Of a stretch of 64,000 nucleotides of DNA, positions 2,082-62,025 are shown one piece after another; position 1 is the first letter of the stretch; every line of letters starts with the position of its first letter. A program made the position numbers and the translations under genes. Location of the stretch: positions 163,584 through 227,583 of IMG/VR virus record IMGVR_UViG_3300042359_000853, one strand, 5' to 3'. The notes under the pieces are model-generated. The model did not search any database. It was not told the DNA's origin and saw only the letters and a list, made by a program, of their open reading frames with translations.

Positions 2082-2888
2082 ATGATACTTGTTACTGGAT
2101 ACAAAGGATTTATTGGTAAAAACCTATTTGATAAACTCATACAACTCAACTACTCCATCACAGGTTTAGATAGTGAATATTTTCTAGAAGAAGATTGGCA
2201 AGGTTGGCTAAAAAAGTACTTGAATGATAAATCACCAAGTTTCGTATTTCATGTAGGTGCGTGCTCCGATACACTAGAGACTGATGTAAATTATATGCTT
2301 ACTAGAAACTATGAATCTACTAGAATCATTTCTTCTTGGTGCGAAAGAAACGGTGTGGGTTTGGTTTATTCTTCCTCGGCTGCTAACTATGGATCGACTG
2401 GTCATCTTCCTACAAATCTTTATGGATGGAGTAAAAAAATAGCTGAAGATTTTGTATTATTAAAAGGTGGGGTTGCTCTTCGATATTTCAATGCCTTCGG
2501 ACCTGGTGAAGAAGGTAAAGGTAAAATGGCTTCTGTAGCCTATCAATCATGGATTAGAAATAAAGTGGGTGAGAAGATTAAACTCTTTCCAGGCCGTCCA
2601 ACTCGAGATTTTATCTATATAAGAGATATTGTAGAGGCGAATATATCTGCTATGAAAAACTACAGATCTATTTTTGGTAATTACTATGATATAGGAACTG
2701 GAGTTTCATCACCATTTGAAGATGTTTTAGAAAATTTAGATATACCTTTCACCTATACCGATAGTCTAGAAATACCAAAAGGATATCAATTTTTCACACA
2801 AGCTAATTCATCGAAATTTCTAAGAGGTTGGGAACCCAGATGGACTCTCTCAACTGCTCTAGCCGATTATAGAAAATATTTAGATTAA
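2082..2888 (+). CDS. hldD: ADP-L-glycero-D-manno-heptose 6-epimerase-like NAD-dependent epimerase
   Basis: TGYKGFIG Rossmann motif, FHVGACSDT, YSSSAANYG, YGWSK (YxxxK), LRYFN.FGPGE..KG.MAS, RDFIYI. Confidence 0.8.
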   Translation: MILVTGYKGFIGKNLFDKLIQLNYSITGLDSEYFLEEDWQGWLKKYLNDKSPSFVFHVGACSDTLETDVNYMLTRNYESTRIISSWCERNGVGLVYSSSAANYGSTGHLPTNLYGWSKKIAEDFVLLKGGVALRYFNAFGPGEEGKGKMASVAYQSWIRNKVGEKIKLFPGRPTRDFIYIRDIVEANISAMKNYRSIFGNYYDIGTGVSSPFEDVLENLDIPFTYTDSLEIPKGYQFFTQANSSKFLRGWEPRWTLSTALADYRKYLD

Positions 2889-3826
2889 GCAAATATCTTA
2901 TTCGCGTAGTTTCTGGTTTCTCTGCTCAATTGGTCCTGTATTTCTACAAAAGGAATTCCATCTTCTAGAGCTTTTTTATAAATATCTAGATTAGGACCAC
3001 TGTTGTATCCAGCAACAGCTAGGTCAAGTCTTTTCGGAAACCTATTTAGATGATCATTCATCATTTTTATATAGATTCTTAAAGATTCTTCTGAATTAGT
3101 TCTTAGACCACGACCACCATAGGAGTTCCAAGTTCCTATCAAAAACTGACACAGACCCACAGCTCCTGCACTAGATCTTGCCCTAGGATTAAAGTTAGAT
3201 TCAGTGTAGATTTGTCTTAGCGCTATAATATAGGGAAGACCTATTGAATTACAATCCCCCTCGAATTTTTTTGCTACTTCTTGGCCTACCACTTCTACGA
3301 ATTTATTCTTCAAGCTCTCATCATCAGGTAAAGGATCTCTAGAAGGGGCTTTAGCACCATCAAAAGTGGGAATACCCCCTTTCAGTGGAAGATCAAACTG
3401 TCTATTTAATACTGGTGATTCAGACTCCTTGCGAACAGGTCCTTCTGGTGGCATTTCAGTTGAGGGTTTTTTTGTAGTAGTAGAAGTTGTTGTTGCTTCT
3501 TTGGTTGTAGTTGTTGGTGTAGTATCTTGTTCTTTTGGTGTTCCGGCTGGTGTTTTCCAGGCCTGAGCTCTAGTTATCACTTTTTTTGGTGAGCCATCTT
3601 CTCTTTCATCTGGAAATTCAGTATCTAATATGTCGATTGATCTTTGATAAGAGTCTTTGAAATCTTTTCCAGTTATTTGATACCATTTCGTTGAACCCTT
3701 TCGTCTTGAGAGCCAATGTCCACCTTCTACCTTGTACTCAAAAGGATCGCCAGATCGTGTTTTAATTTCACCTACAGATTCGGTCAGATAGCTATAAAAT
3801 TGTTCCCAATTATGAAGTCTTCTCAT
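2885..3826 (-). CDS. Lytic transglycosylase (C-terminal SLT domain) with Thr-rich linker; putative virion protein
   Basis: IYTESNFNPRARSSAGAVGLCQF, AVAGYNSG and ETRNY SLT motifs; TTPTTTTKEATTTSTTT linker. Confidence 0.85.
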   Translation of the reverse strand: MRRLHNWEQFYSYLTESVGEIKTRSGDPFEYKVEGGHWLSRRKGSTKWYQITGKDFKDSYQRSIDILDTEFPDEREDGSPKKVITRAQAWKTPAGTPKEQDTTPTTTTKEATTTSTTTKKPSTEMPPEGPVRKESESPVLNRQFDLPLKGGIPTFDGAKAPSRDPLPDDESLKNKFVEVVGQEVAKKFEGDCNSIGLPYIIALRQIYTESNFNPRARSSAGAVGLCQFLIGTWNSYGGRGLRTNSEESLRIYIKMMNDHLNRFPKRLDLAVAGYNSGPNLDIYKKALEDGIPFVEIQDQLSRETRNYANKIFA

Positions 3827-3840
3827 AGATTTGTTTTTTT

Positions 3841-4407
3841 TTATCTAGAATAGTTAGGTGTTCTAGGCCCCTTTTTGCCCTCTTTTTCAACCTTTCTTTT
3901 ACGAGCAACAGATGCCTTTTTTTGTTTTTTTGTCATTTTAGCTGCTACTCTTACCTTACGACATTTTGGATATCCACCCCTCGACGCATCATCTCTACCA
4001 CATGGTGGATGTGATCCATCTGGATTTGTTTTAGAAATATCAACCCACTTTTCTTTAAACCACTTATCTAGACCACCGTGAGTATCTGAATAAGACCGTT
4101 TTTTTTCAAAGAACTGAGAATAGGATAGAATGTTATCTATAGATTCCTGTGTATTTTCTATTTGTTCTAGTTTATCGTAGTATTTCGGATCTTCCATCAG
4201 ATGATCAGTAGCTATTTCTCTAGCAATACTCTGGTCATCGGTGTGCTCCATTTCAACAGAAATACCCCTTTCTAGTTGCTTGTCGATCGTCTGATCTTCA
4301 ATAGGAAGATTGTGTTTCTTCTTGATATCTGCTAGAGTTTTACCATCGGATAGACCACCTGGTATTTTATCTTCTAAAAAAGATTGATATTTTAGAACGT
4401 CTTTCAT
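3841..4407 (-). CDS. Two-domain hypothetical protein (GIxVEMEHT...DHLxEDPKYY domain plus GLDKWFKEKWVD basic domain)
   Basis: Both motifs recur in large-phage hypothetical proteins; ORF is tightly packed with its neighbours. Confidence 0.7.
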   Translation of the reverse strand: MKDVLKYQSFLEDKIPGGLSDGKTLADIKKKHNLPIEDQTIDKQLERGISVEMEHTDDQSIAREIATDHLMEDPKYYDKLEQIENTQESIDNILSYSQFFEKKRSYSDTHGGLDKWFKEKWVDISKTNPDGSHPPCGRDDASRGGYPKCRKVRVAAKMTKKQKKASVARKRKVEKEGKKGPRTPNYSR

Positions 4408-5195
4408 TTTTTGGATCTTGATTTTTTCTTACCCTTTTTCCAGCGACCACCCTTTTCTTTGTATCTTTTAGCTGCTGCTCCTACAGCATAGGCTGAAGGC
4501 CAAACTTCGTATCTTGATTTGGCCCAACTCTTACAAGAAGCCCAAAGAGATGGATTGAGAGGTATGTTTTTCTCTAATAAAAAACTATATCCAACACTTT
4601 CATTATGTTGTATGTAAAGTTTCAGCTCATCTTGAATAAACCCAACCGCCTCTTCTATTCCAGAAAAGTATAACTCTTCAAATTCATCGTCTAAGTCTTC
4701 GAGATTAGTAGAGAATAGTTTATGTATTCTCACTAGACCTTCTTCACGATTTTCATCTATGTTGATAACCCACTCATAATAATAATCAAGATCGAGTTCA
4801 TCGCTAGTATATCTAACTTTCACAACAATATCATCATCTTGCATTTCCCAATCGAATTTAGATTCAAGCCCTGAAAAAAGTTCAGAAAATTCAATCATTT
4901 TTTCTTTTAGATAATTAATATCTTGAGATATATCTTCATTTATTTGATAAAATTGAGAAAATTTGTAAACAATACCCTCTTCTATCTGTGATTGAACTTG
5001 GGTATCTAAAATTTCATATTCATCTATATCGGGAAGAAGAGCTAATTTACTACCAGAATCCCAATCTACAAAAATACTTCCCATATCATCAATATAACTT
5101 ATTTTTCCCTCATCACCACTTCTAAGTTTAGTATAGGGATCTTCCAGTCGTATAATTCTTACTCTTTTTCCTATTAAATTGTCTTTTTCTTTCAT
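4404..5195 (-). CDS. Modular hypothetical protein (DUF4314-like N-terminus; basic VWPSAYA C-terminal domain)
   Basis: RVRIIRLEDPY..L..GDEG.I..IDDMGSIFVDWDSGSKLAL resembles DUF4314; C-terminus NPSLWASCK..AK.RYEVWPSAYA. Confidence 0.65.
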   Translation of the reverse strand: MKEKDNLIGKRVRIIRLEDPYTKLRSGDEGKISYIDDMGSIFVDWDSGSKLALLPDIDEYEILDTQVQSQIEEGIVYKFSQFYQINEDISQDINYLKEKMIEFSELFSGLESKFDWEMQDDDIVVKVRYTSDELDLDYYYEWVINIDENREEGLVRIHKLFSTNLEDLDDEFEELYFSGIEEAVGFIQDELKLYIQHNESVGYSFLLEKNIPLNPSLWASCKSWAKSRYEVWPSAYAVGAAAKRYKEKGGRWKKGKKKSRSKK

Positions 5196-5967: not shown

Positions 5968-6699
5968 ATGTTCAAACCAAATACCAATAACTATAGAACA
6001 AAATATTCTAAAATATCTCAATTTCATGATTTTACTGATAACATCTCATCTGAAAAAGATGATTTAGAAAGTGTAAAAAGAAGTTATGATCAAGATCATG
6101 ATTCAGATTATGAGCTACCTAATCTCTTCAAGTATAAATACAACCGTGTAACTCGAAAGATAGATGATAAAACGAAAGCTGAAGTTTTAGATGAGTTAGA
6201 AGAGATGCCAAATCCAAAAAAAGAAAAAGAATATACATTAGAACTTGAAAATTTAACTTCATTTGAGGATTTCGCAGATACACCGTCAAATGAAGTGAAT
6301 GAAGGACCAACTTCCTATATGTTTTTCAATAATCTTAAACTTATTCATAAACTTGTTAACGAAATGCTTACTTACGACCAAGAAGTAGTAAACTCTATTT
6401 TAGATCACGGTCACAACTGGGCCGAAGATCATATGTCAGTAGCAAAAGAAGCTATTTCTCATGTAAGAAACTATTTTGTTGGTGAAGTTGATGCTATCTC
6501 CGAATCTTACGAAGGTAACTATATGTTTTTCGGAAATCTAGTTTGTATTTCTGATATGATTGAAGAGATTATGGATAGAGATCCAAATAAAATTGACGTA
6601 GAGCTTAAAGAAAAACACGACTGGGCTGAAGATCATGTCTCAGCCGCTAAAGAAAATGTTACACAAGTTTATGATTTTCTAAAAAATGAAATTAAATAA
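5968..6699 (+). CDS. Hypothetical protein with two tandem (S/N)YMFF..NL...HxWAEDHxSxAKE domains
   Basis: Internal duplication is visible: SYMFFNNL...GHNWAEDHMSVAKE and NYMFFGNL...KHDWAEDHVSAAKE. Confidence 0.75.
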   Translation: MFKPNTNNYRTKYSKISQFHDFTDNISSEKDDLESVKRSYDQDHDSDYELPNLFKYKYNRVTRKIDDKTKAEVLDELEEMPNPKKEKEYTLELENLTSFEDFADTPSNEVNEGPTSYMFFNNLKLIHKLVNEMLTYDQEVVNSILDHGHNWAEDHMSVAKEAISHVRNYFVGEVDAISESYEGNYMFFGNLVCISDMIEEIMDRDPNKIDVELKEKHDWAEDHVSAAKENVTQVYDFLKNEIK

Positions 6700-6702: not shown

Positions 6703-8124
6703 ATGATTGATAAATATTCCCAGTTTTTAGCACAAAAACTCTTATTAGAATCTGAAATCAAATATTCTGATGGTTTTAGAAAGATATTATCTGATATTGG
6801 TGACCCAGTAAGTAAAACACTATCTTCTCTGGAAAATCAAGATATTAAAACGAATGTTAATTTTATTGATATTCTCAAAGATGATAAAGAGCAATTATCG
6901 TTTATTCAAGATAAAAAAGCTTCAACTCTTTTAAGTAAACTCAAAAATGAAATAGATGTAACTTGGAATGGACAGGGTGGAATACTCAAGAACAACGCGG
7001 ATAATGAAGATGTTTTTTCAGCTCTTGGATATGTTAGACCTGAATCCGGTAATCTTCCAAGACCAGCTTCTACACAAACCAGAGGAAAATTATTGAGAGA
7101 TACGATTTCACCTAAAAGTGGTAAAATCTATGTTCTTGTAAAGTTTGGTGATATGGAAACAGTTCTCAATAAAGAGTTCTTAAATTTTGTTGATAGATCC
7201 GATGAGATCTGGACCCAATCAGTTAGACAACCCATGCGTGTAGGAAGAGCAGTGACTGCTCTATTACAAAATGCACCTGTGAAACACACTTCGGTTGAAA
7301 TTGCTGATTTTGTAAATAGATATAAAACAAAAGTTGATGAACTAAATGACGTATTTAGATTTATAGAAGTTGTAAGTGGTGATGATATAGCTAAGTGGTA
7401 TCATGTAGAAAACTATGAAGAAAAATCGGGTGGTTCAGAACTTCACCGATCATGTATGGCAAGAAAATCAGCAGGTGTCTTTGAAATCTATACCAAGAAT
7501 CCAGAAGTTTGTCAGTTAATTATTCAAAAAAGTGAGAGTGATCCCGACAAAATATCCGCTAGAGCTCTTCTGTGGACTTTGAATAGTGGAAAAAAGTTTA
7601 TGGATAGAGTTTATTTTAATGATCCTCAGTCTATTGAGTTATTTAGAAGTTATTGTAAAGAAAATAATATATGGGCTAAATATAATAATAATAGCGGAGC
7701 TTTTTCATCTGCTATTAATCCCGAAAATGGATCTAGAGAAGAGATCGAAATAGAAGTGGTTCTTGAATCGAGGAAGTACCGTCAGTTTCCCTATATGGAT
7801 ACACTGAAGTTTTTTCATCCGAAAAAAGCAATTCTAGACAACTCACATGAGGATGATCCGAACTGGTATAAATTAGAAGACACCGCTGGTGATTATATAA
7901 GTCAAGAAGATCAGGGGTGTGATAGGTGCTACGGTGAAGATTATGTTGATTGTTGGGAATGTGATGGAACGGCTTATTCTAGTTGTGATAATTGTGACGG
8001 AGACGGTAAAGTTGAAGATGAAGATGGAACAAAAGTTGAATGTGATGTATGCAATGGTAGTGGCAGAATCAATTGTGATACTTGTGATGGGGATGGAAGA
8101 CTTACTTGTCCTGAATGTGGTTAA
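6703..8124 (+). CDS. Hypothetical protein with C-terminal DnaJ-like CxxCxGxG zinc-finger repeats
   Basis: Six CxxC units in the last ~70 aa; SCM, ARALLW, FMDRVY and FPYMDT motifs upstream. Confidence 0.75.
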   Translation: MIDKYSQFLAQKLLLESEIKYSDGFRKILSDIGDPVSKTLSSLENQDIKTNVNFIDILKDDKEQLSFIQDKKASTLLSKLKNEIDVTWNGQGGILKNNADNEDVFSALGYVRPESGNLPRPASTQTRGKLLRDTISPKSGKIYVLVKFGDMETVLNKEFLNFVDRSDEIWTQSVRQPMRVGRAVTALLQNAPVKHTSVEIADFVNRYKTKVDELNDVFRFIEVVSGDDIAKWYHVENYEEKSGGSELHRSCMARKSAGVFEIYTKNPEVCQLIIQKSESDPDKISARALLWTLNSGKKFMDRVYFNDPQSIELFRSYCKENNIWAKYNNNSGAFSSAINPENGSREEIEIEVVLESRKYRQFPYMDTLKFFHPKKAILDNSHEDDPNWYKLEDTAGDYISQEDQGCDRCYGEDYVDCWECDGTAYSSCDNCDGDGKVEDEDGTKVECDVCNGSGRINCDTCDGDGRLTCPECG

Positions 8125-8126: not shown

Positions 8127-9068
8127 TTAAATCTTGATTCCTGTCACTGGATCGTAGTTTAAAATAAGAATCTCACGACCTTTTTCTTGTGGTTTTTTTG
8201 TTGATGCGTTATTTCCACCTGAGGCAGAGGATCGATTAACTTCTTTTTCATACCACACATATTTATCTTTCGGAAGAAGCTCTTCAAGTAATGGAAAGTA
8301 ATAATAAGATAGAGACCACCTTGAAGATGTAGTTTTAAGAAGTTCTAATAACCTTCTATGTGAAGCGGGACCGAATACACCTTCAGAATCTGCACCATAC
8401 CAAAATAATCTTTTAGCATCATCTTCACCCTTTTCATTTGGTCTAAAATAAGGTGGATCTAGATATAGATAAGTTGTTGGGCTATCCCATTTTCTAATCA
8501 GAACCTCGAAATCTAGATTATTAAATTCAGTGATTGAATTTAACTTCTGCTCATATTTGCCCTCTTTAAGTTTTTTTAGAAGTGTAAGAAGTTTTAGTCG
8601 GTCTTTATCTTTTTTGTAACCATTAAACCCAGCTCCTCTTGGATAAACCGAATTGTGAGAAGATGTGATTAAAAACGCGTAGATTGCTGCTCTCTTTAGG
8701 TCAGGAATCTCGAAATCTGTAATATCCAAGAAATCATTCTTGGTATATTTGTGGTAGATAGATTTGTAAAAATCCCATTTTTTTAAGGGGTCAGTTTCTG
8801 TCGTTCTTAGAGGACCAGATAAGAACTTTTCTAGAACATCTACGAATGCATCTTTTTGAGAAGCACATTTGAAGAGATTGACTTGGTGTCTGTTTTTATC
8901 ATTGAAGATGACTTTGTCAAAGACCAACTCTGGATCATCCATGTAAGTGGCAAAGCTACCACTGAATGGTTCAATATAACAATCTATACCGGTTTTGGGA
9001 ATTTTTTTATTGATAAATTCCATAAAAACATTCGAACTCTTGCCGCCAAAAAAACTGATAATTGACAT
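8127..9068 (-). CDS. DNA adenine methyltransferase (Dam/D12 class)
   Basis: FFGGKS, YIEPFSGS (motif I) and YLDPPY (motif IV). Confidence 0.9.
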   Translation of the reverse strand: MSIISFFGGKSSNVFMEFINKKIPKTGIDCYIEPFSGSFATYMDDPELVFDKVIFNDKNRHQVNLFKCASQKDAFVDVLEKFLSGPLRTTETDPLKKWDFYKSIYHKYTKNDFLDITDFEIPDLKRAAIYAFLITSSHNSVYPRGAGFNGYKKDKDRLKLLTLLKKLKEGKYEQKLNSITEFNNLDFEVLIRKWDSPTTYLYLDPPYFRPNEKGEDDAKRLFWYGADSEGVFGPASHRRLLELLKTTSSRWSLSYYYFPLLEELLPKDKYVWYEKEVNRSSASGGNNASTKKPQEKGREILILNYDPVTGIKI

Positions 9069-12047: not shown

Positions 12048-12377
12048 TTATAAAAGTCTATTTAGTTGAGATAAACCCTGATAAATATCAATAACTCGTA
12101 GTTTTAGAACAGATTGAGTTGATGGTGATGTCATCGATTGACCTTCTCTACGAATAAAGGCAGTTATATAAACAACATCCCCTCTTTTTACTTCTTTGTT
12201 AGCTAAATCTGTATTTACTGCTATTAAGTTTTCATTGGCACCAGAAGTAGATTCTTTTTCAGGTTCTACGAAAATATCAACAATAGATTCTATTTCGATT
12301 TTACCAGAAATCTCGTCAGAATCGAGATTTAATTTTTTATCTTCTACGTCAGAAGAGAGATTTGTAAATTTCTTCAT
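12048..12377 (-). CDS. Hypothetical protein
   Basis: ORF divergent from 12423 across an ATATATATA element. Confidence 0.65.
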   Translation of the reverse strand: MKKFTNLSSDVEDKKLNLDSDEISGKIEIESIVDIFVEPEKESTSGANENLIAVNTDLANKEVKRGDVVYITAFIRREGQSMTSPSTQSVLKLRVIDIYQGLSQLNRLL

Positions 12378-12422
12378 TAAACAATCGGTTTTTAATATAT
12401 ATATAAAATTTAAAGGAATAAA

Positions 12423-13739
12423 ATGTCAAAATTAGTAAACTTGAACACAATCAGTGATTCAGACCAAATCGATAAGATCTTGGATTCTGATCTGATGATA
12501 TTTGAAGATGTTCAAGGATCAAAAATATTAGTTCAATGGGATGGTGAAAAATTCACGATAAAACCAAAATCTTTATCTTCAGAACCTATCAACCTAGTTG
12601 ATTTAGCTATGCAGAACTATTATAACGCGGCTTTTGACTACCTTAATTCGTTAGATAAAAGAGTGAAAACATTACTCAATAAAAAGTGGTGGTATGTTTT
12701 TGAGTATTTCTCTGATAATCAACCTGCTAATATAGCTTACACAAGAACCCCAAAAAACGGATTAGTTCTAACATCCATCATTAAAGGTCGTGATTATAAC
12801 TATACTATCGAGGAGCTTGATGAATATTCCAGACTTTTCAATGTTGATCCTCTGCCGATTATTTTTCGGGGAAGACTTTCACAAAAAACAAGAGAAGCTA
12901 TTAAATATTTTCTCAACACCTCTGAGAAAGATTTAGAATATGTTTTTGGTGAAAAATCTTTTGCTTTTTTCTTTTACAAAATACTTAACCCTAACACACA
13001 AAACTCTTTTCTGATGGAAGATGAGTTTCAAAATAATCTAGAAAAACTGATTATTAAAACACCAGATACCGAAACAACATTTGCTATCTTAAATCCACTC
13101 TATAAAAAAATATCTGATAATGGATCTACTGAATTTGTTGAAGTATATACTCTTATTTTAGTTAACTTTTTGAGTTTTTGTCAATCCGTGGATCTGAAAC
13201 GTATAAAGTTGGATGCCACCAATCGTGAAGAAGCCTATATTAGCCTAATATGTAAACTATTTAATGTGTATATGACCGAGGTTAAATCTGATGTTTTAGA
13301 TTTTGAGTTTACGATACCTCATTTTTTCAATAAAGATAAGTTTAAAATAAATCGTGAGCTTATTTCTGATGTAGCTACAAAGAATATTATCTCACAAGAT
13401 CCGAAAATAGAATATATCTTCAAAGTGGTCCTGGGATCATTCAACAGAAAAAAGAAAAAACCGATTGGTGTTTTTAATAATAATACCTTAAATCTTTTCA
13501 ATAATTTTGTAGATACTTTAGAAGCTCGTGTTGATGAGTATCTTAACAAAAAATCAGAAATAGAACTCACCAAAAAGGGTCTTCTAGATTTTAGTGATTA
13601 TTTTGATATTAAATATGATACTGATTCACAAGGTCAAGTTTATCCAGATGTCTATAAAGAGTTTGAGAAGGGAGCTGATGAGAAATCTAAAAAAGATAAA
13701 TCACCAAAAGGATTCTCAATTCCAGAAAAAAAACCTTGA
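12423..13739 (+). CDS. Hypothetical protein with degenerate RNA-ligase-2-like nucleotidyltransferase motifs
   Basis: FEDVQGSKILVQWDG resembles motif I (EKxDGxN) without the Lys; YVFEYF, DPLPIIFRG and LEKLIIK resemble later motifs. The CDS is confident; the family assignment is tentative. Confidence 0.5.
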   Translation: MSKLVNLNTISDSDQIDKILDSDLMIFEDVQGSKILVQWDGEKFTIKPKSLSSEPINLVDLAMQNYYNAAFDYLNSLDKRVKTLLNKKWWYVFEYFSDNQPANIAYTRTPKNGLVLTSIIKGRDYNYTIEELDEYSRLFNVDPLPIIFRGRLSQKTREAIKYFLNTSEKDLEYVFGEKSFAFFFYKILNPNTQNSFLMEDEFQNNLEKLIIKTPDTETTFAILNPLYKKISDNGSTEFVEVYTLILVNFLSFCQSVDLKRIKLDATNREEAYISLICKLFNVYMTEVKSDVLDFEFTIPHFFNKDKFKINRELISDVATKNIISQDPKIEYIFKVVLGSFNRKKKKPIGVFNNNTLNLFNNFVDTLEARVDEYLNKKSEIELTKKGLLDFSDYFDIKYDTDSQGQVYPDVYKEFEKGADEKSKKDKSPKGFSIPEKKP

Positions 13740-13861
13740 ACTTTTAATCTATAATATCATACCTATTAGGTATTATAAATAATTATATTTTTTATAGTAA
13801 AATATAGAAAAAAAGTTGAAAAAATACTACTTTACAGATTTATATTTTAATATATAGATCT

Positions 13862-14431
13862 ATGAAATATAAAGTAAGTGAATATGCTAAATTGAAAAAC
13901 GTTACCTACCGAACCGTTTGGAACTGGATAAAATCAAATAAGATAGACTATCAAACTACAAACACCGGTGGTCTGGTTATAGTTGAAGAAGATCCCAATT
14001 CAAATAAAGAGGTAGCAGTTTATGCTCGTGTTTCTTCATCAGAGAATAAAGATAATCTAGAAAGACAGAAAAATAGATTATTGGACTATTGTGCTTCTAG
14101 AGGATATAAAGTTTCTAGTATAGTAACAGAGATTGGATCTGGATTGAACGATAAAAGACCAAAATTAGAAAAAATTCTAACAAATAGATCTATAAGTATA
14201 ATTGTAGTTGAACATCGGGATAGATTATCAAGATTTGGATTTAATTATATAGAAAAACTATTAAATTCAAATGATAGAAGGATAGAGGTAATAAATGAGC
14301 CTCTTAATGAAAAAGAAGATTTAATACAAGACTTTGTATCTATAATTACTAGTTTTACCGCTAGATTGTATGGACAAAGAAGAAGTAAAAGAAGAACCGA
14401 ATTTCTTATAAAAAATCTACAAAGTGAATGA
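13862..14431 (+). CDS. tnpA: IS607 transposase TnpA (MerR-like HTH + serine recombinase)
   Basis: N-terminal HTH, VAVYARVSS catalytic motif, EIGSGLN, VEHRDRLSRFG, EDLIQDFVSIITSF. Confidence 0.95.
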   Translation: MKYKVSEYAKLKNVTYRTVWNWIKSNKIDYQTTNTGGLVIVEEDPNSNKEVAVYARVSSSENKDNLERQKNRLLDYCASRGYKVSSIVTEIGSGLNDKRPKLEKILTNRSISIIVVEHRDRLSRFGFNYIEKLLNSNDRRIEVINEPLNEKEDLIQDFVSIITSFTARLYGQRRSKRRTEFLIKNLQSE

Positions 14432-16791: not shown

Positions 16792-16815
16792 TCTTCTTTT
16801 TTAATATATACCTTC

Positions 16816-17355: not shown

Positions 17356-17362
17356 AAAATAT

Positions 17363-46184: not shown

Positions 46185-46210
46185 AATAATATTAAATTTG
46201 TTCTATATAT

Positions 46211-48935: not shown

Positions 48936-51080
48936 ATGGCAGTAGCAAAAAAAGAAGAAGTTGTTAAGCAGATAGTATTCACAACCAAAATGGTTGAGAA
49001 TGTTACCAAAAATATAAACGACGGTGTAGTCGTAAAAAGATTTCAAAACCCTTGGTTTCAAAACGAAATCGGTGTAAGAAGAAGTGGAGTTGTATTCAAT
49101 AGAACAGAAGAAGAACTTCAAGAATACATTAAATGTAAACTTGATATTAAATATTTTGCACAAAAATATTGTAAAATAAAAACAGAAGATGGAACGATAA
49201 CACATATCGAGCTTCGTGATTACCAAAAAGAAATCTTAGATCTATTCTCAAAAAATAGATTTTCTATACTTTGTTCGAGTAGACAAATAGGAAAAACCGT
49301 AAACACCGCGATCACGATATTACATTTTCTACTTTTCAACAACGATAAAAACGCGATGATCGTAGCAAACGTAGCTGCTACAACAATTGAAATCGTAGAT
49401 AAGATTAAGGCTATTTATGTTCTTCTACCTTTCTTTCTGAAGGCTGGTATAAAAAACTGGAATCAACGAAGTATTGTATTTGATAATGGTTGTAGAATAA
49501 AAACTGCGGCTAGGTCTAAAACACCAGCTATTGGTTTTACGATTGACCTACTTTATATGGACGAATTTGCGCATATTCCCTCGAATATCATCGAACCCTA
49601 CTACACGGCTGCCTATCCAACGGTATCTGCTATACAGAACTCAAAAATTATTATTACTTCAACCCCGAACGGTATGAACCTGTTCTATAAACTTTTAACA
49701 GCTGCTGAAAGACCTGAGGGAGATCCACTCAAGAACAACTACAAAGCTATGAGAGTTTATTGGTATCAAGTTCCTGGTAGGTTCGTGACTTACTACCGAT
49801 TGAATCCATTTAAAATGAGAGATTTTGATCTTACCAAAGAAATGGTCTTCAATATAGCTCGTGAAGAGTTTGAAGATTCTACAAAAGTTCTACTTAAATA
49901 CAATCCAGATTTCGAGAAAGATGTTGTTCATGTTTATAACAACGATATTATTACGGAGGATGTATCTAAAGGATTTAGATTCTTAACACCATCGGGTAAA
50001 GAAATACACATTTCACAGATAGCTGAAGTTTCAACTTGGAAAGAAGAAGCTATCAAAGATATTGGTGGAGAAGATGCATTTAATCAAGAGTTTGGATTGA
50101 GATTTATTAACTCTTCAAGATCCCTACTTTCAGAGAGTGTAATAGAGGGTCTTATAAAGGCTAAGAAAAACTATCAGTGGCAAGAGATTGATAAGATGGA
50201 GACTTTGCTTAATTTTTCCTATCAAGATCTTAAATGGATCGATGATCCTGATATTTTTTCTCAAGAAAGAAGAAAGTTAGTTAAAGGTGTAATATCAATC
50301 GATATATCTGAAGGTTTAGGTCAAGATTATTCTGTTATGAATATATTTAAGATCTCACCGAAATCACTAGACACGGTAGAAGCTTTCAGCGTTGATTATA
50401 AAAATTTATCTGATTTCTTTTGTCTAGAACAAATAGGTTTATTTAGAAGTAATGTTATTTCAGTAAAGCAACTAGCTGAACTTTTCTATGTTTTAGCTTT
50501 TGAGTTTTTTGATCCCGATAACTTTAAGGTTGTTCTAGAAATTAATACCTACGGAAATGAGTTTTTAGCTCATCTACCACATGTGTTTGATGGTAACAAC
50601 AATTACGGTAGTAATATTTTCTTTAGATATAAGCATAAATCCGACGCTATAGAAGAAAAAGTCGGTCTTAAACTAGGTGAAAACAAAAATCTTTTAGTGA
50701 AAGATTATCAAGATAACATGAATAAGAAAAATATTATCATCAATAACGAAGATAATATTAGAGAAATAACTACTTTTGTTAAGCACACAACAGCTCACGG
50801 CAACACTCGTTACGCCGCAGATATTGGAAATGATGATATAGTTATGACCGTAGTAAACTCATCGTCGGTTTTCCAAAAACATCCGTTCAGAGAAATTGTT
50901 GAAGATGCTGCTCCTGTCATAGCTGGAACCGAGTTATACAAACATTTTCAGGCAATATTAGGAAATCAAGTTGATGAAAACTCAATCAACTACTCGTCGA
51001 TTATTAGAGAGCAGAAGTTCAGAAAGGATAGACTAAAGAAGATGTCAAGTTACGAAAAAAGTCCTTGGGCTAGAGATTAA
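48936..51080 (+). CDS. terL: Terminase large subunit (T4 gp17-like)
   Basis: YFAQKYCKI, LRDYQ, SRQIGKT (Walker A), LLYMDEFAH (Walker B), STPNGMN.FY, IDISEGLGQDYS, NDDIVM. Confidence 0.95.
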   Translation: MAVAKKEEVVKQIVFTTKMVENVTKNINDGVVVKRFQNPWFQNEIGVRRSGVVFNRTEEELQEYIKCKLDIKYFAQKYCKIKTEDGTITHIELRDYQKEILDLFSKNRFSILCSSRQIGKTVNTAITILHFLLFNNDKNAMIVANVAATTIEIVDKIKAIYVLLPFFLKAGIKNWNQRSIVFDNGCRIKTAARSKTPAIGFTIDLLYMDEFAHIPSNIIEPYYTAAYPTVSAIQNSKIIITSTPNGMNLFYKLLTAAERPEGDPLKNNYKAMRVYWYQVPGRFVTYYRLNPFKMRDFDLTKEMVFNIAREEFEDSTKVLLKYNPDFEKDVVHVYNNDIITEDVSKGFRFLTPSGKEIHISQIAEVSTWKEEAIKDIGGEDAFNQEFGLRFINSSRSLLSESVIEGLIKAKKNYQWQEIDKMETLLNFSYQDLKWIDDPDIFSQERRKLVKGVISIDISEGLGQDYSVMNIFKISPKSLDTVEAFSVDYKNLSDFFCLEQIGLFRSNVISVKQLAELFYVLAFEFFDPDNFKVVLEINTYGNEFLAHLPHVFDGNNNYGSNIFFRYKHKSDAIEEKVGLKLGENKNLLVKDYQDNMNKKNIIINNEDNIREITTFVKHTTAHGNTRYAADIGNDDIVMTVVNSSSVFQKHPFREIVEDAAPVIAGTELYKHFQAILGNQVDENSINYSSIIREQKFRKDRLKKMSSYEKSPWARD

Positions 51081-51361
51081 ACAGATTCGATTGTTACTGA
51101 GAGACCGTTCAGCTTCAAGGCTTCGTAGGGTTTTTCAACTTCTGATTTCGATCCACGTTTTACATCACAAATGCCACGAAAATGAACAATATGAGCACAT
51201 TGATTAGCTTGATCATAATCATGATCACAAAACTCTATCAAGCAGTTTATAACATGTTGAAAACTATTATGGTCATCGTTATGAAGATAAAGAATATATC
51301 CTGAAGAATAGATCTGATCTAGTTTTTCTTCGGTTTTATCTCTGGTGATTGTTTTAGACAT
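51077..51361 (-). CDS. clpS: ATP-dependent Clp protease adaptor ClpS
   Basis: LYLHNDDHNSFQHVI.CL...C.H...QA.QCA.IVH.RG.C.VK.G......L...GLSVTIE. Confidence 0.9.
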   Translation of the reverse strand: MSKTITRDKTEEKLDQIYSSGYILYLHNDDHNSFQHVINCLIEFCDHDYDQANQCAHIVHFRGICDVKRGSKSEVEKPYEALKLNGLSVTIESV

Positions 51362-52392: not shown

Positions 52393-53028
52393 ATGAAAAG
52401 TTATGTAGCTAGATTTGATTCTTACCAAAAACAAAAAAGAAGAGAAGATATCATCAAAGAATCGGTTCTTCAAGTAAATGATATTTACAAGGTGAGAACC
52501 ATGGTTGATATTCCACAGAGTCTTATCAACGCTTATGTTAAAAAAGTAAAAGATGTTACTGGTAACAATCTTAGACAATTTTTCGGTGATGTTGATATCG
52601 CTGAAGAAATAATCAAGCATATCAATCTTAATTATTTAGATGCTGATAAAATTCCAGCAAATGCTTTGATGGGTGGTCCATCACAAACACAAACACAGAC
52701 ACAAGGACAAGCTCAAGGACAAGCCCAGACACAAGCACAACCACAAGCCCAGCCACAAGCACAACCACAAGGACAATCCCAGCCACAAGGTCAAGCTCAG
52801 GGACAAGTCGAGCCACAAGGTCAAGCTCAGGGACGACCACAAGCCGAGCCACAAGCTCAACCACAAGCACAACCAGAAGATGAAGGACAATCACAGGGTC
52901 AAGTTCAAGTTCAAACCCAAGTTCAAGGACAAGGCGAGCCTGAAGATGAAGATTTTGAAGATCTAGAAGATGAAGAAACTGGTGAAGATGAAGAAGAGAG
53001 AGAAGAAGATACGGAAGAACTTCCTTAA
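52393..53028 (+). CDS. Hypothetical protein with Gln/Ala/Pro repeat and acidic tail
   Basis: QAQPQ/QGQ repeats (~52681-52935) then EDEDFEDLEDEE. Confidence 0.75.
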   Translation: MKSYVARFDSYQKQKRREDIIKESVLQVNDIYKVRTMVDIPQSLINAYVKKVKDVTGNNLRQFFGDVDIAEEIIKHINLNYLDADKIPANALMGGPSQTQTQTQGQAQGQAQTQAQPQAQPQAQPQGQSQPQGQAQGQVEPQGQAQGRPQAEPQAQPQAQPEDEGQSQGQVQVQTQVQGQGEPEDEDFEDLEDEETGEDEEEREEDTEELP

Positions 53029-53050
53029 CATATAAAAAAAAATAGAAAAT

Positions 53051-53080
53051 GACCTCACTTTTTCAAGTGGGGTTTTTTTC
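53051..53080 (+). terminator. Intrinsic terminator
   Basis: acctcactt-tttc-aagtggggt followed by a T-run. Confidence 0.75.
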
Positions 53081-53108
53081 TGCCTCAAATATTTCAATAT
53101 ATAGAATT

Positions 53109-53720
53109 ATGATGATAAAAACCTTCGAAAAGTTCAGGCACCAGGAGATACTCATTATTGTGGATGTTCAGAAAAGTTTCCGTAAATTTTTTACAGAGAT
53201 GTATCTGAACGAGTTGAAAAAATACTGCAAAGAGTTTGATAAGGTCTATTATATTTTTGATAATCATGTTGATGGTAAAAATGTTGATCAAGATTATCTC
53301 TATGATAGAAATGTTCAGGTCGAAGGTCATCCGGATCTCTATGAGTTTCCTAATATGGAAGATATGATTGAAAAAAGATATAATTATGATGTTGATGTTG
53401 AATTTTTCAAAGATGTTCTCACTCACAAAACTTATCAAGAGATTAAAAAATTAGAATCAAGAAAAAAATTGAAACGTGGAGATTTTTTCAGAACAAAAGA
53501 AAATACGATACTCGTCTATATCGGAAATAATCATCAGTGGTTTCACTGCCCGAAGAAACTCTACGAAGTTTTAGTAGAGAACACAGAAAATACCATTACA
53601 ATTGTGGGTGGTAGTGATAAAGAGTGCCTAGAAGATGTTTTTATCACTGCCTCTGCACTTGGCGTTGAGATGAAAAGAAATTGGAAATATATCTACTCGG
53701 GATCTCATTGTCCTTTATAA
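53109..53720 (+). CDS. Isochorismatase-like cysteine hydrolase
   Basis: LIIVDVQ (Asp), EKRY (Lys), IVGGSDKEC (Cys). Start moved to 53109 because the tracked start runs through the terminator. Confidence 0.65.
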   Translation: MMIKTFEKFRHQEILIIVDVQKSFRKFFTEMYLNELKKYCKEFDKVYYIFDNHVDGKNVDQDYLYDRNVQVEGHPDLYEFPNMEDMIEKRYNYDVDVEFFKDVLTHKTYQEIKKLESRKKLKRGDFFRTKENTILVYIGNNHQWFHCPKKLYEVLVENTENTITIVGGSDKECLEDVFITASALGVEMKRNWKYIYSGSHCPL

Positions 53721-53727: not shown

Positions 53728-54117
53728 TTGAAGATGAGAAATATACTCGATTTTTACATACTTTATCCGGGTCATCCAAGATACGAAAGTGCTAATTTAA
53801 TTGAAGACGATCTTATACGTATCATTATTCAAAAATATGAGATGATTATTTTTACTATTAAAGGAGATGTTCTTGGTGATCCAAATTTTGGAGCTTCCCT
53901 AGAAAGTCTTCTTCATACCACTCTATTATCAGGAATTGCGGTAGAAGAGAGTATCAAGGCTCAAATAGACACTTATATACCAGAGCTACAGGGAAGAAAA
54001 TACACATTAAGAGTTGAATTTATTCAAGATAATACCGACTTCAGAGAAGTTATGGTAATTTATTTTCAAATCGCTGACTATGATGTCTATTCCATATTCG
54101 GCGAGAGTTCTATGTAA
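53728..54117 (+). CDS. Baseplate wedge protein (gp25-like)
   Basis: IIFTIKGDVLGDPNFGASLESLL...I..QI..YIPE. Confidence 0.75.
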   Translation: MKMRNILDFYILYPGHPRYESANLIEDDLIRIIIQKYEMIIFTIKGDVLGDPNFGASLESLLHTTLLSGIAVEESIKAQIDTYIPELQGRKYTLRVEFIQDNTDFREVMVIYFQIADYDVYSIFGESSM

Positions 54118-55093
54118 GGCTGATTTCTCTCATACGACCTATGAACGCAACTGCTACTACTAGAGGATCAGAGGAAGTTTGTAAAAATCTCTGAGATTCA
54201 CTCAAAATCCAATTGTATTTGAATAATTTTTCAGAATCTACTTTTTTGTTTTCTAGATGCCAAAGTATAAAGCTCTTACCCCATAAATCTAAAAATTCTA
54301 CTACACGATCAGAACCAAATTTATCTGATATAAAAAAATATATCTTTTCATAATCTATATTTTTGTCATAAATAAGAGAATAGCACTCTCTGATCAAATC
54401 ATTTGAAATACTTATACCTGAAAAATTAGATTGACCAGAATTTTTATAATACTCAAGTTCAACTAGTATAGATCTGAAATCTGGGAATTTTTTTTTGATG
54501 AGAGAGACCAAATCTTCTTTGGACATCGACAGATTTTCACTAGGTAAGATTTGATCGTTGATCTTTCTGAACATTTCTATTTTTAGTGCTCTCTCCTCAT
54601 CAATACTTTGACACTCAAGATTAATTTGTATGAAACGACTTCGAATACCTTCAGATATTTTACTAAGATGATTTGTAGATAGTATAAACCGAACATTCTT
54701 GGTAGAGTAATCTTCTATGTATGCTTTAAGAGCGTCTTGATATTGAATTGAAGTTCTATCGAATTCATCTAAAAAAACATACTTAATCAGATTGGTCTCT
54801 GATTGTTCTATATCAAAGTCGAGAAATACTTTAGAGCAGAACTCGTCTATTTTTCCTCTCAAAATATCTATAGAAGTATAGAAAGAAGAGTTTATCTCGA
54901 TGTGTGGTGAATTTTTAGAGTATTTACCAATAAGAATTCTTGCAAGAGAAGTTTTACCTATGCCGTAATGTCCATGTAGAATAACATTTTGGGTGAGGCC
55001 AGATGAAAAATAATCTCTGACTCTTTTTGGTAATAGAAGATCTTCGAACTTTTTAGGTCTCCACTTATCAGAAATAAGAAGTTGTCTGTCCAT
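54110..55093 (-). CDS. Sliding-clamp loader ATPase (gp44/RFC-like)
   Basis: DKWRPKKFEDLLLP, GHYGIGKTS, YVFLDEFD, FILSTN, IRSRF, PDFRS; ATG at 55093 (tracked TTG at 55132 also possible). Confidence 0.9.
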   Translation of the reverse strand: MDRQLLISDKWRPKKFEDLLLPKRVRDYFSSGLTQNVILHGHYGIGKTSLARILIGKYSKNSPHIEINSSFYTSIDILRGKIDEFCSKVFLDFDIEQSETNLIKYVFLDEFDRTSIQYQDALKAYIEDYSTKNVRFILSTNHLSKISEGIRSRFIQINLECQSIDEERALKIEMFRKINDQILPSENLSMSKEDLVSLIKKKFPDFRSILVELEYYKNSGQSNFSGISISNDLIRECYSLIYDKNIDYEKIYFFISDKFGSDRVVEFLDLWGKSFILWHLENKKVDSEKLFKYNWILSESQRFLQTSSDPLVVAVAFIGRMREISLT

Positions 55094-55163
55094 TGGGTTG
55101 ATTATATGTGGAGGATTTCCGATTGTTTTCAAGAAAGATTAAAAAACAAATATATACAAAAAT

Positions 55164-58180: not shown

Positions 58181-58209
58181 GGTTTATATAAGTTACAAAC
58201 AATTTAAAA

Positions 58210-59317: not shown

Positions 59318-59342
59318 AATCCCAACAGATTTTATCTATCCG

Positions 59343-59376: not shown

Positions 59377-59378
59377 GA

Positions 59379-61106: not shown

Positions 61107-61150
61107 ATTAAACTATATATTCTAAAACAGAGCTATCACACAAACAAAAT

Positions 61151-61417
61151 TCATGAAAGTTTTATAAGTTTTATTTTTAGATCTCCTGAACCTTTGATTA
61201 CTCGATGATAGACACCTTTTGGTATAAAAATTTTACCGGATATTATTTTAGGAAGTTCATTATCCATTTGTATCATCCAATCTGTTCCAGATAATGACTC
61301 AATTATTCTATCTTCTCGATCTCTATGCCAAACATAATCACCAGAATCAACATCTTGATCGAAAGTTCTTAGGAAGATATTTTCACCTATCGTTTTTTCT
61401 TTGAAAGGTAAATTCAT
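61151..61417 (-). CDS. Small cupin-like protein
   Basis: WHRDREDR...IFIPKGVYHRVIKG cupin-type His pattern. Confidence 0.6.
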   Translation of the reverse strand: MNLPFKEKTIGENIFLRTFDQDVDSGDYVWHRDREDRIIESLSGTDWMIQMDNELPKIISGKIFIPKGVYHRVIKGSGDLKIKLIKLS

Positions 61418-61443
61418 AAATTTTTTTTTTAATATTTTTTATT

Positions 61444-62025
61444 TTACCAGAACCCCGGATATGACTTACCCCAAAGAGAGGAGAATCTGTTAGCACGACA
61501 TGCCCAGTAACCAGGTGTCATTTTATCCTTTTTTTCACGACAATTATGTCTTTTCGAAAATCTAGCTCTTGCTTTCGGATCACTAACTTTAGCATTTAGA
61601 CCACCTTTTACATCACCAAAATGAACTACTTTCACATTTCCAGTCTTGGGGTTTTTAACATAAACTTTATACTTTTTAGGTCCTGAACTTCTCATAGGTT
61701 TTCCAAGACTTACTTTTTTTCCTTTATATTCAGCTTCTGTAATAAACTCATCACAAAGTATCGGAAAATCAAGTGGCACCATTTCCCCTTCGAACTTTGC
61801 CCAAAGACCTAGATCACTCTCTTCAAAAAGAACTCGATCAGCATCACTCAATAATTCTTGATGATTTCTTGATTCTCTTATCAACTCGAAAAATGAAGTA
61901 GATCCAGGTCTAAATATATTTTCCAAAACTGATATCTTATTTTCTAAGTGATAAACTAGATTATTACTTGGCTTCTTATCGATGAAGTCCTCGAATTTTA
62001 ATATATTCTCGTAAATATTTTCCAT
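61444..62025 (-). CDS. Two-domain hypothetical protein (basic KKYKVYV...HFGD...HNC...GYWAC C-terminal domain)
   Basis: Motif recurs in large-phage hypothetical proteins; KFEDF N-terminal motif and an ITE^AEYKG junction. Confidence 0.7.
   Translation of the reverse strand: MENIYENILKFEDFIDKKPSNNLVYHLENKISVLENIFRPGSTSFFELIRESRNHQELLSDADRVLFEESDLGLWAKFEGEMVPLDFPILCDEFITEAEYKGKKVSLGKPMRSSGPKKYKVYVKNPKTGNVKVVHFGDVKGGLNAKVSDPKARARFSKRHNCREKKDKMTPGYWACRANRFSSLWGKSYPGFW

What the first reader, a model, noticed from the sequence alone, without database searches (positions are those of the whole stretch)
2885..62025. T4 capsid-targeting-like motif (K-F/Y-x-x-F..E) marks about 14 proteins as a candidate packaged and ejected proteome
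Seen at N-termini: LHNWEQFYSYLTES (3826), LKYQSFLED (4407), IDKYSQFLAQKLLLES (6703), IKKFEEF (36544), LQSFRSFLE (43596), YILKRDTFL (46184), VARFDSY (52393), IKTFEKF (53109), ILKFEDFID (62025). Also near the start of 5968 (KISQFHDF) and at C-termini: IKTFESFK (47847) and NESKILSFKNY (11525). Established: T4 internal proteins use MKTYQEFIAE as a capsid-targeting sequence, removed by gp21 after (I/L)-x-E. Inference: many 'hypotheticals' here, including enzymes, are loaded into the head and delivered at infection; C-terminal copies suggest a position-independent scaffold-binding motif.
Basis: partly seen in the sequence, partly recalled or inferred. Interest (0 to 1): 0.75.

Follow-up and report, generated by a model that had tools for sequence, protein, structure and literature searches.

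The report
T4-like capsid-targeting tag in a megaphage
About one in ten proteins of this huge T4-type phage starts with a short two-aromatic tag that closely resembles the signal phage T4 uses to load proteins into its head, so the phage may inject many of its own proteins with its DNA; this has not been shown by experiment.

Summary
The motif is real and well above chance. The window is the last 64 kb of a 227-kb fragment of a Mahaphage-type megaphage. It has a T4-type head module and probably infects Bacteroidota. The regex [ILVM]xx[FYW]xx[FY] starts within the first 12 residues of 27 of 235 ORFs on the contig, against 10.8±3.2 in N-terminal shuffles. In a complete 635-kb relative it hits 141 of 897 ORFs (z 16). 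It is not enriched in 1184 Bacteroidota chromosomal ORFs or in AT-rich phage G. The preferred register is M-[KR]-x-h-x-x-Ar7-x-x-F10, usually followed by h-x-E.

A scoring matrix trained only on the relative's N-termini ranks T4's IpII, IpIII and IpI as the top three annotated genes among 241 T4 ORFs. Carriers are unrelated to each other, mostly ORFans, acidic, and poor in membrane segments. They are enriched behind the TATATATA motif that precedes the head and tail genes. The tag is modular, and AlphaFold does not pack it into the fold.

My reading is a T4 capsid-targeting-sequence analogue used on a much larger scale (confidence about 0.55). Packaging, cleavage and ejection are inferred, not shown. 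The C-terminal copies are not robust. About 7 to 10 window proteins carry the tag, not 14.

The parts
3776..3826 (-). Tag of the SLT transglycosylase ORF 2885..3826. Residues 1-17 are MRRLHNWEQFYSYLTES, with an L-T-E site.
   Evidence: Matrix score 16.2 bits.
4369..4407 (-). Tag of the DUF5661/DUF5872 protein 3841..4407 (MKDVLKYQSFLED). It lies directly before the domain start IPGGLSDGKT.
   Evidence: 15.2 bits. Untagged homologues exist.
6004..6033 (+). Off-register copy at residues 13-22 of ORF 5968..6699 (YSKISQFHDF).
   Evidence: Not scored as a tag. An ortholog in LR756502 has the motif at residues 6-12.
6703..6750 (+). Tag of ORF 6703..8124 (MIDKYSQFLAQKLLLE), with an L-L-E site. This is a member of an expanded family.
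   Evidence: 16.1 bits. Paralog at contig 16322..17611. Four tandem paralogs in LR756501, three of them tagged.
36544..36573 (+). Tag of the 141-aa ORF 36544..36969 (MKLIKKFEEF).
   Evidence: 22.9 bits, the best in the window.
43561..43596 (-). Tag of the 184-aa ORF 43042..43596 (MKILQSFRSFLE).
   Evidence: 16.5 bits.
46152..46184 (-). Borderline tag of the 861-aa ORF 43599..46184 (MRYILKRDTFL). The first aromatic is replaced by R.
   Evidence: 10.1 bits.
52393..52425 (+). Tag of the 211-aa acidic-tailed ORF 52393..53028 (MKSYVARFDSY). An I-K-E site lies at residues 21-23.
   Evidence: 2.3 bits here. Orthologs start MKHIRTYENY and MKHIRQFESY.
53109..53138 (+). Tag of ORF 53109..53720 (MMIKTFEKFR). 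The true start is this internal ATG, not 53049.
   Evidence: 17.4 bits. All 120 listed homologues carry the tag about 5 aa before the first strand. pLDDT is 48 for residues 1-10 and 90 for residues 11-20.
61978..62025 (-). Weaker tag of ORF 61444..62025 (residues 8-14, ILKFEDF).
   Evidence: 6.5 bits.
62270..62299 (+). Weaker tag of the ORF that starts at 62270 and runs off the window (MVLEKWQLFN).
   Evidence: 7.1 bits.
26189..28318 (-). Head maturation protease (residues 4-252) fused to a scaffold-like C-terminal part. This is the presumed docking and processing partner.
   Evidence: phrog_207 E 2.6e-29. Peptidase_S77 E 8.4e-5, below the cut-off. Over 3700 homologues, some with PF03420.
26963..27463 (-). 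About 11 tandem 14-residue repeats of consensus NI(S/A)YSEY(L/I)AENLD in the scaffold part. Each holds Ar-x-x-Ar-(L/I)-A-E.
   Evidence: 42-nt period, 9.9 copies at 27000-27415. Conserved in four relatives.
24456..26114 (-). Gp23-type major capsid protein. Its N-terminal part holds SEYAEYHSINE-N at residues 34-45 (window 25980-26015), where T4 gp23 has FGSFLTE before its cleavage site.
   Evidence: PF07068 E 2e-27.. The placement against T4 was made by eye, not by a computed alignment.
19893..21599 (-). Gp20-type portal protein.
   Evidence: PF07230 E 4.8e-50.

Best explanation
The N-terminal motif is a modular protein tag that works like the T4 capsid-targeting sequence. Its form is M-[KR]-x-h-x-x-Ar-x-x-[FY], often followed by h-x-E.

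Proposed mechanism: tagged proteins are made together with the head proteins. Their tag docks them onto the assembling prohead core, which is built from the protease-scaffold fusion. Some then have the tag clipped off after the following Glu by the T4-type head protease. The mature proteins stay in the head with the DNA and enter the host at infection.

Shown: the motif, its enrichment, its restriction to this clade, its protein-level conservation, its modularity, its sequence match to the T4 Ip leaders, the presence of T4-type head machinery, and the link to the upstream motif shared with structural genes.

Inferred: docking, cleavage, packaging and ejection.
For: 1. Enrichment and specificity. 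Own contig 27/235 against 10.8±3.2. LR745206 141/897, z 16.4. LR756501 z 14.1. LR756504 z 9.2. Bacteroidota loci, phage G and T4 are not enriched.
2. Cross-recognition. A matrix trained on LR745206 N-termini scores 10 bits or more in 17/235 own ORFs, 0/484 phage G ORFs and 3/1184 bacterial ORFs. In T4 it gives ipII 17.4, ipIII 16.9 and ipI 16.5 bits as the top three annotated genes.
3. T4 mutagenesis places targeting on residues 4 and 7, the same i/i+3 aromatic pair (PMC9026906).
4. T4-type capsid protein, portal and protease-scaffold are present. The scaffold carries about 11 copies of Y-x-E-Y-(L/I)-A-E, which matches T4's YQEFIAE at five of seven positions.
5. N-terminal motifs, compared with interior ones, are followed by h-x-E (45% vs 15%, P 3e-6) and by E/N at +5 (47% vs 14%), and preceded by K/R (60% vs 26%).
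6. Carriers are not paralogs, with one exception. Orthologs keep the tag with F/Y/W swaps. All 120 listed homologues of the 53109 protein keep it.
7. The tag is modular. Tagged and untagged DUF5661 homologues differ only by the roughly 12-aa extension. AlphaFold gives pLDDT 48 for the tag and 90 for the next ten residues.
8. Co-regulation. [AT]ATATATA precedes the capsid, protease, portal, sheath, terminase and endolysin genes. It lies within 60 nt upstream of 82/151 carriers against 139/746 other ORFs in LR745206 (P 3e-18), and upstream of 17/28 against 66/219 on the own contig.
9. Carriers are a distinct class. TM-like segments occur in 5/151 against 77/707. D+E is 18.6% against 14.9%. One carrier is an SLT transglycosylase matching a PHROG named 'internal virion protein with endolysin domain'.
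Against: - There is no virion proteome, no N-terminal sequencing and no structure.
- The number of carriers is far beyond any known packaged set: about 100 above chance in a 635-kb genome, against 3 in T4.
- More than half of the carriers lack a clear (I/L)xE site. The best-conserved family (53109) has none between tag and fold.
- Carriers are acidic, whereas T4 Ips are described as basic proteins.
- The TATATATA motif also precedes a topoisomerase-like gene and a DnaJ gene, so it is not proven to be a late promoter.
- The scaffold repeat does not fit the tag matrix, because its hydrophobic residue is at -2, not -3.
- The complex prediction gave no answer.
Confidence: 0.55

Rival explanations
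1. The tag is a docking peptide for some other shared partner, not the prohead. Candidates are the phage's own Hsp70/DnaJ chaperones, an intracellular compartment or import system, or a protease or adaptor that times the removal of these proteins.
For: - The tag is a conserved, unpacked, modular linear motif, which would fit any common binding partner.
- The contig encodes DnaK, two DnaJ proteins and ClpS.
- The number of carriers is high for a packaged set.
- Many carriers lack a cleavage site.
Against: - None of these partners is known to read such a motif.
- The matrix singles out exactly the T4 Ip leaders.
- The h-x-E site after the tag is enriched.
- The tag is linked to the upstream motif of the structural genes.
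- ClpS reads a free N-terminal aromatic or Leu residue, which these proteins do not have as translated (established knowledge, not tested here).
Confidence: 0.25
2. The motif is only a favoured way of starting a protein in this clade, such as an N-terminal amphipathic helix or a translation-related bias at the 5' end of short-leader mRNAs. It has no shared targeting role.
For: - N-termini are rich in K, L and I.
- Many carriers have the upstream motif only 4-8 nt before the ATG, which suggests very short leaders.
Against: - Shuffles that keep N-terminal composition do not reproduce it.
- Synonymous codons are used as in the rest of the genome.
- F/Y/W and I/L/V substitutions preserve residue class across 120 homologues.
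- It is absent from equally AT-rich phage G and from Bacteroidota genes.
- AlphaFold does not pack the tag into the fold.
Confidence: 0.12
3. The motif is chance or a shared-ancestry artefact: the carriers are paralogs of one family, or the pattern is compositional noise.
For: - The loose regex has a background of about 4% of N-termini in the controls.
- One carrier pair is paralogous.
Against: - All-against-all BLAST finds no other similarity between carriers.
- z scores are 5 to 16 in five genomes and about 0 in the controls.
Confidence: 0.03

Closest known systems
Capsid-targeting sequence (CTS) of T4 and T-even internal proteins IpI, IpII, IpIII and related Ips
   Same: - A short leader at the extreme N-terminus, with two aromatic residues three apart after a hydrophobic residue and a basic residue, often followed by (L/I)-x-E.
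- It is shared by otherwise unrelated, non-conserved proteins.
- It occurs in a phage with Gp23/Gp20/Gp21-type head genes.
- The megaphage matrix ranks the three T4 Ips first among annotated T4 genes.
   Different: - The preferred register is three residues longer: the first aromatic is at residue 7, not 4.
- Glu often comes one or two residues after the second aromatic, not three.
- Many carriers have no cleavage site.
- Carriers are acidic, not basic.
- There are roughly 100-150 carriers per genome against 3 in T4 and 'at least 10' across the T-evens.
- No experimental evidence exists here.
T4 prohead core: gp21 protease, gp22 scaffold, and the gp23 propeptide
   Same: - The N-terminal 250 residues match head maturation protease families.
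- T4 gp22 holds KEWLAEN and starts MLKEQLIAEA. T4 gp23 has FGSFLTE before its cleavage site. All are of the same shape as the megaphage repeat YSEYLAEN and its capsid-protein stretch YAEYHSINE.
   Different: - Protease and scaffold are one 709-aa polypeptide.
- The motif is amplified into about 11 tandem 14-residue repeats.
- The Peptidase_S77 score is below Pfam's cut-off in this copy.
Propeptide-dependent head proteins of giant phages phiKZ and SPN3US (ejection or inner-body proteins)
   Same: Many different proteins are packaged in a large head, and a prohead protease processes them after Glu (abstracts of PMC5694885, PMC7411985 and PMC10052503).
   Different: A shared N-terminal leader motif is not, to my knowledge, described for those phages (my own knowledge, not checked in the papers). 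The head module here is of T4 type.

Membership tests
T4-type capsid-targeting sequence (CTS) | Located at the extreme N-terminus of the precursor | tested here: met
   The first aromatic is at residue 7 in 23 of 60 instances and at residues 4-12 in all of them. There is no enrichment at interior positions. C-termini are not robustly enriched.
T4-type capsid-targeting sequence (CTS) | Two aromatic residues at i and i+3 that carry targeting (T4 residues 4 and 7) | tested here: met
   The sequence pattern is present and conserved. The T4 rule comes from PMC9026906. The role of these residues in targeting was not tested here.
T4-type capsid-targeting sequence (CTS) | Followed by an (L/I)-x-E site cut by the head protease | tested here: inconclusive
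   h-x-E follows 45% of N-terminal motifs against 15% of interior ones. The strict [ILV]xE form follows 26% against 14%. It is absent in the 53109 family. Cleavage itself cannot be tested with these tools.
T4-type capsid-targeting sequence (CTS) | Shared by otherwise unrelated proteins | tested here: met
   BLAST all-against-all finds only one paralogous carrier pair. Tagged and untagged homologues of one domain exist.
T4-type capsid-targeting sequence (CTS) | The genome encodes a Gp21-type protease, a scaffold core and a Gp23-type capsid | tested here: met
   PF07068 and PF07230 hits. phrog_207. PF03420 is weak here but is annotated on close homologues.
T4-type capsid-targeting sequence (CTS) | The tag is necessary and sufficient for packaging into the head, and the proteins are ejected | not testable with these tools
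   This needs virion proteomics or reporter fusions. The complex prediction gave no answer.
Peptidase S77 (T4 gp21 prohead protease) | Match to PF03420 above the curated cut-off | tested here: not met
   19.1 bits against a cut-off of 27, E 8.4e-5. phrog_207 'head maturation protease' matches at E 2.6e-29, and homologues of 65-70% identity carry PF03420. It is a distant relative, not a clean member by Pfam's rule.

The most novel reading that the evidence does not exclude
Mahaphage-type megaphages use one T4-like leader to load on the order of a hundred different, mostly acidic ORFan proteins into the head. If so, each infection starts with the injection of a large ready-made protein arsenal, and that arsenal can be read from any genome of the clade with a simple N-terminal scoring matrix.
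Probability: 0.4. Interest if true: 0.85.

Novelty: new variant of a known kind. Interest (0 to 1): 0.7.

Why it matters
None of the six full-text searches on capsid targeting, internal proteins, Mahaphage and huge phages found a paper describing such a tag in huge phages.

Most genes of huge phages are ORFans with no handle for study. If the tag marks packaged and ejected proteins, it sorts roughly a tenth of the proteome of an abundant, uncultured clade into one functional class. The protease-scaffold alone has over 3700 homologues in metagenomes. In T4, proteins of this class are anti-restriction factors.

It would also show that the T4 targeting system is old, portable and scalable. It would offer a candidate tag for loading cargo into large capsids. 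It raises the question of how a head sorts a hundred clients.

If the tag instead binds another partner, it still defines a large, previously unnoticed client set.

Tried and rejected
- Complex prediction of the protease-scaffold with the tagged 53109 protein scored 0.00, 'no answer'. It is not evidence either way.
- 'The tag mimics the scaffold repeat' is only loosely supported. A profile of the repeat puts 6 of its top 30 hits at N-termini against 1.2 expected. The repeat unit itself fails the tag matrix, because its hydrophobic residue is at -2.
- Paralogy of carriers is rejected.
- A nucleotide-level signal is rejected.
- A general AT-rich or Bacteroidota N-terminal bias is rejected.
- 'Carriers lack known domains' is weak. 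Pfam hits occur in 2/29 carriers against 6/20 random others. PHROGs and two Atlas searches added no function.
- The fold of the 53109 protein is only weakly nicotinamidase/isochorismatase-like: TM 0.42-0.53, no match at E 0.001 or better.
- The carrier 52393 has homologues only in the five related megaphage records of the phage collection.
- Not used: the representative-library search, sequencing-run look-ups, and a second structure prediction.


Full report
**What the window is.** The window is bases 163584-227583 of a 227,583-bp viral contig that CheckV rates 39% complete. Its capsid and protease region is about 70% identical in DNA to uncultured huge phages of 635-735 kb: LR745206, LR756502, LR756504, LR756501/3. 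These sizes fit the huge-phage set of PMC7162821, whose abstract reports a 735-kb genome. I did not check the accessions or the clade name 'Mahaphage' in that paper. The window encodes:
- a Gp23-type major capsid protein (24456..26114, minus strand)
- a Gp20-type portal (19893..21599, minus strand)
- a T4-type large terminase (48936..51080)
- a ClpS homologue
- a protein with a type IX secretion sorting domain

The phage DnaK is 62-68% identical to DnaK of Sphingobacteriales and Flavobacteriales. A Bacteroidota host is therefore likely.

I generalised the motif to [ILVM]xx[FYW]xx[FY] and called ORFs on the whole contig with a simple rule: longest non-overlapping ORFs, first ATG.
- The motif starts within the first 12 residues of 27 of 235 ORFs. 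The interior rate predicts 7.7.
- Shuffling residues 2-25 of each protein gives about 11±3.1. None of 2000 shuffles reached 27.
- The reversed pattern gives no N-terminal hit.
- Synonymous codons at motif positions are used as elsewhere in the genome.
- The conserved positions vary within residue classes: F/Y/W and I/L/V.

The constraint is therefore on the protein, not on the DNA or mRNA.

**Anatomy of the motif.** I pooled 60 instances from the contig and four relatives. The first aromatic sits at residue 7 in 23 of them, which gives M-[KR]-x-h-x-x-Ar-x-x-[FY]. I then compared N-terminal hits with interior hits of the same regex:

| Feature | N-terminal | Interior | P |
|---|---|---|---|
| followed by hydrophobic-x-Glu | 45% | 15% | 3e-6 |
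| Glu or Asn two residues after the second aromatic | 47% | 14% | 1e-7 |
| preceded by Lys/Arg | 60% | 26% | 2e-6 |

The real signal is thus longer than the regex, and it includes a feature shaped like a T4 processing site.

**Specificity.** The same ORF caller and test were run on relatives and controls.

| Genome | Regex hits | z vs shuffles |
|---|---|---|
| LR745206, complete | 141/897 (15.7%) | 16.4 |
| LR756501, 400 kb | 18.1% | 14.1 |
| LR756504, 400 kb | 14.1% | 9.2 |
| 80 Bacteroidota chromosomal loci, 1184 ORFs | 2.5-4.3% | -0.4 to 1.0 |
| Phage G, 400 kb, 30% GC, no S77 protease hit | 3.5% | -0.3 |
| T4 | 14/241 (5.8%) | 1.8 |

The motif is a property of this clade. It is not a general property of AT-rich genomes, of the host phylum, or of large phages.

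**Link to the T4 capsid-targeting sequence.** T4 ipII and ipIII start with MKTYQEFIAE. A review of the Black laboratory's work reports three things (PMC9026906):
- The first ten residues of IpIII suffice for packaging.
- Residues 4 and 7 matter most for targeting. These are the two aromatics.
- Residues 8 and 10 matter for processing.

T-even Ip genes have been recognised by this leader. Ip1-3 are injected inhibitors of GmrSD restriction enzymes (PMC12373910).

I trained a 16-column scoring matrix only on N-termini of LR745206 and applied it elsewhere. Scores of 10 bits or more were found as follows:

| Genome | ORFs at 10 bits or more |
|---|---|
| Own contig | 17/235 |
| Bacteroidota loci | 3/1184 |
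| Phage G | 0/484 |
| T4 | 4/241 |

In T4 the three best annotated genes are ipII (17.4 bits), ipIII (16.9) and ipI (16.5). The fourth hit is a spurious ORF inside the tRNA cluster. A model that was never trained on T4 thus recovers exactly the proteins for which capsid targeting has been shown by experiment.

**The machinery.** ORF 26189..28318 (minus strand, 709 aa) has three parts.
- The N-terminal 250 residues match head maturation protease families: phrog_207 at E 2.6e-29, and Peptidase_S77 at 19 bits, below its cut-off.
- A scaffold-like part follows, with about 11 tandem 14-residue repeats of consensus NI(S/A)YSEY(L/I)AENLD. The DNA period is 42 nt.
- An acidic stretch and a conserved C-terminal domain complete the protein.

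All four relatives have the same fusion and repeats. More than 3700 homologues exist in metagenomes, on contigs of up to 770 kb.

Each repeat holds Y-x-E-Y-(L/I)-A-E, which matches T4's YQEFIAE at five of seven positions. T4 gp22 contains KEWLAEN and starts MLKEQLIAEA. T4 gp23 has FGSFLTE just before its known cleavage site (the cleavage position is from my own knowledge). The capsid protein here has YAEYHSINE-N at what appears, by eye, to be the corresponding place.

So the pattern aromatic-x-x-aromatic-hydrophobic-x-Glu recurs in core components and clients of both phages. The resemblance between the tag and the repeat is loose, however. The repeat has its upstream hydrophobic residue at -2, not -3, and fails the tag matrix. 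A repeat-derived profile enriches N-termini only modestly.

**Who carries the tag.**
- In the window the carriers at 10 bits or more start at 3826, 4407, 6703, 36544, 43596, 53109 and, borderline, 46184. Weaker ones start at 52393, 62025 and 62270.
- Carriers share no sequence beyond the tag, apart from one paralogous pair.
- Only the SLT transglycosylase (2885..3826) and the DUF5661/DUF5872 protein (3841..4407) have Pfam families. The SLT domain also matches a PHROG named 'internal virion protein with endolysin domain'.
- Orthologs keep the tag while swapping F, Y and W.
- The protein starting at 53109 belongs to a family of at least 1260 members. All 120 listed members start with the tag about five residues before the first strand. 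In the AlphaFold model of this family, residues 1-10 have pLDDT 48 and residues 11-20 have 90. The tag behaves as a conserved but unpacked linear motif.
- DUF5661 homologues exist with and without the roughly 12-residue tag in front of the same domain start. Small DUF5872-like proteins carry the tag followed at once by (I/L)-x-E-E and a lysine run.
- In LR745206, carriers differ from other ORFs. They have fewer membrane-like segments (5/151 against 77/707). They are more acidic (D+E 18.6% against 14.9%). Their median length is 174 residues. They are spread over the whole genome but sit next to each other twice as often as chance predicts.

**Co-regulation.** An upstream motif, [AT]ATATATA, lies 4-30 nt before the start of 83 of 247 ORFs on the contig. 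These include the capsid, protease-scaffold, portal, sheath, terminase and endolysin genes. The same holds in LR745206.
- On the own contig, 17/28 carriers have it against 66/219 other ORFs (P 0.002). Most of the remaining window carriers lie just downstream of such a gene on the same strand.
- In LR745206 the figures are 82/151 against 139/746 (P 3e-18).

The motif resembles the T4 late promoter TATAAATA (my own knowledge). It also precedes a topoisomerase-like gene and a DnaJ gene, so its timing is not established.

**Weighing.** The sequence, genomic and comparative evidence fits a T4-like targeting tag well. Chance, paralogy, composition and nucleotide-level causes are excluded. What remains open is what the tag binds and whether the proteins end up in the virion. 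Four points argue for caution:
- The number of carriers is very large.
- Many carriers lack a cleavage site.
- Carriers are acidic.
- There are no experimental data at all.

The complex prediction gave no answer. I put 0.55 on the capsid-targeting reading, 0.25 on another shared partner, 0.12 on no shared role, and 0.03 on artefact.

- The C-terminal copies exist. C-terminal enrichment is absent in the complete relative (26 against 27.2±5.0) and marginal on the own contig (15 against 7.2±2.7). I do not accept position independence.
- 'Including enzymes' rests on SLT and a weak nicotinamidase-like fold match.
- 'About 14 proteins' should read 7 to 10 in this window, 17-27 on the contig, and on the order of 100-150 in a complete genome of the clade.

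Noticed in passing
window 26963-27463 (within ORF 26189..28318, minus strand): The head protease is fused to a scaffold that holds about 11 tandem 14-residue repeats of consensus NI(S/A)YSEY(L/I)AENLD. The fusion is conserved in four relatives and in thousands of metagenomic homologues.
   Followed up: partly
window-wide, e.g. upstream of ORF starts at 26114, 28318, 21599, 33913 and 48936: The motif [AT]ATATATA lies 4-30 nt before 83 of 247 ORF starts on the contig, including all recognisable head and tail genes. It may be a late promoter. One class of genes has it only 4-8 nt before the ATG, which would mean very short or absent leaders.
   Followed up: partly
window 22847..24364 and 28397..30103 (both minus strand); contig 44856..46622: Three paralogous homing-endonuclease genes (phrog_3339, DUF7487). 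Two of them bracket the capsid-protein and protease-scaffold genes.
   Followed up: partly
window 13862..15597 (plus strand): An IS607-like pair inside the phage genome: a serine resolvase (PF00239) followed by a TnpB-type OrfB_IS605 protein with a Cas12f-like TNB domain.
   Followed up: partly
window 51077..51361 (minus strand): A phage-encoded ClpS adaptor homologue (PF02617, E 9e-14), next to the terminase gene.
   Followed up: no
window 40716..42617 (minus strand); also 36963..40295: A protein with a cohesin domain and a type IX secretion C-terminal sorting domain. Beside it lie several ORFs whose N-termini look like signal peptides. This points to a Bacteroidota host and to phage proteins exported by the host system.
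   Followed up: no
contig 12051..13928, 40563..41585 and 102443..103168 (outside the window): The phage encodes an Hsp70/DnaK (62-68% identical to Bacteroidota DnaK). It also encodes two DnaJ-like proteins; the second was confirmed by Pfam and the first is its paralogue.
   Followed up: partly
window 53049..53720: The longest ORF starts at 53049. Homologues and the tag show that the real start is the ATG at 53109.
   Followed up: yes
window 8127..9068 (minus strand), 54110..55132 (minus strand), 954..2078, 2082..2888: Four further Pfam matches in the window:
- 8127..9068: D12-class adenine DNA methyltransferase
- 54110..55132: Gp44-like clamp-loader ATPase
- 954..2078: calcineurin-like phosphoesterase
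- 2082..2888: NAD-dependent epimerase
   Followed up: partly
locus L017 31985..36250 (LR756501): Four tandem paralogs of the window's 6703..8124 family. Three have different versions of the tag, and similarity begins only after residue 50-120. This looks like local expansion of a tagged family.
   Followed up: partly
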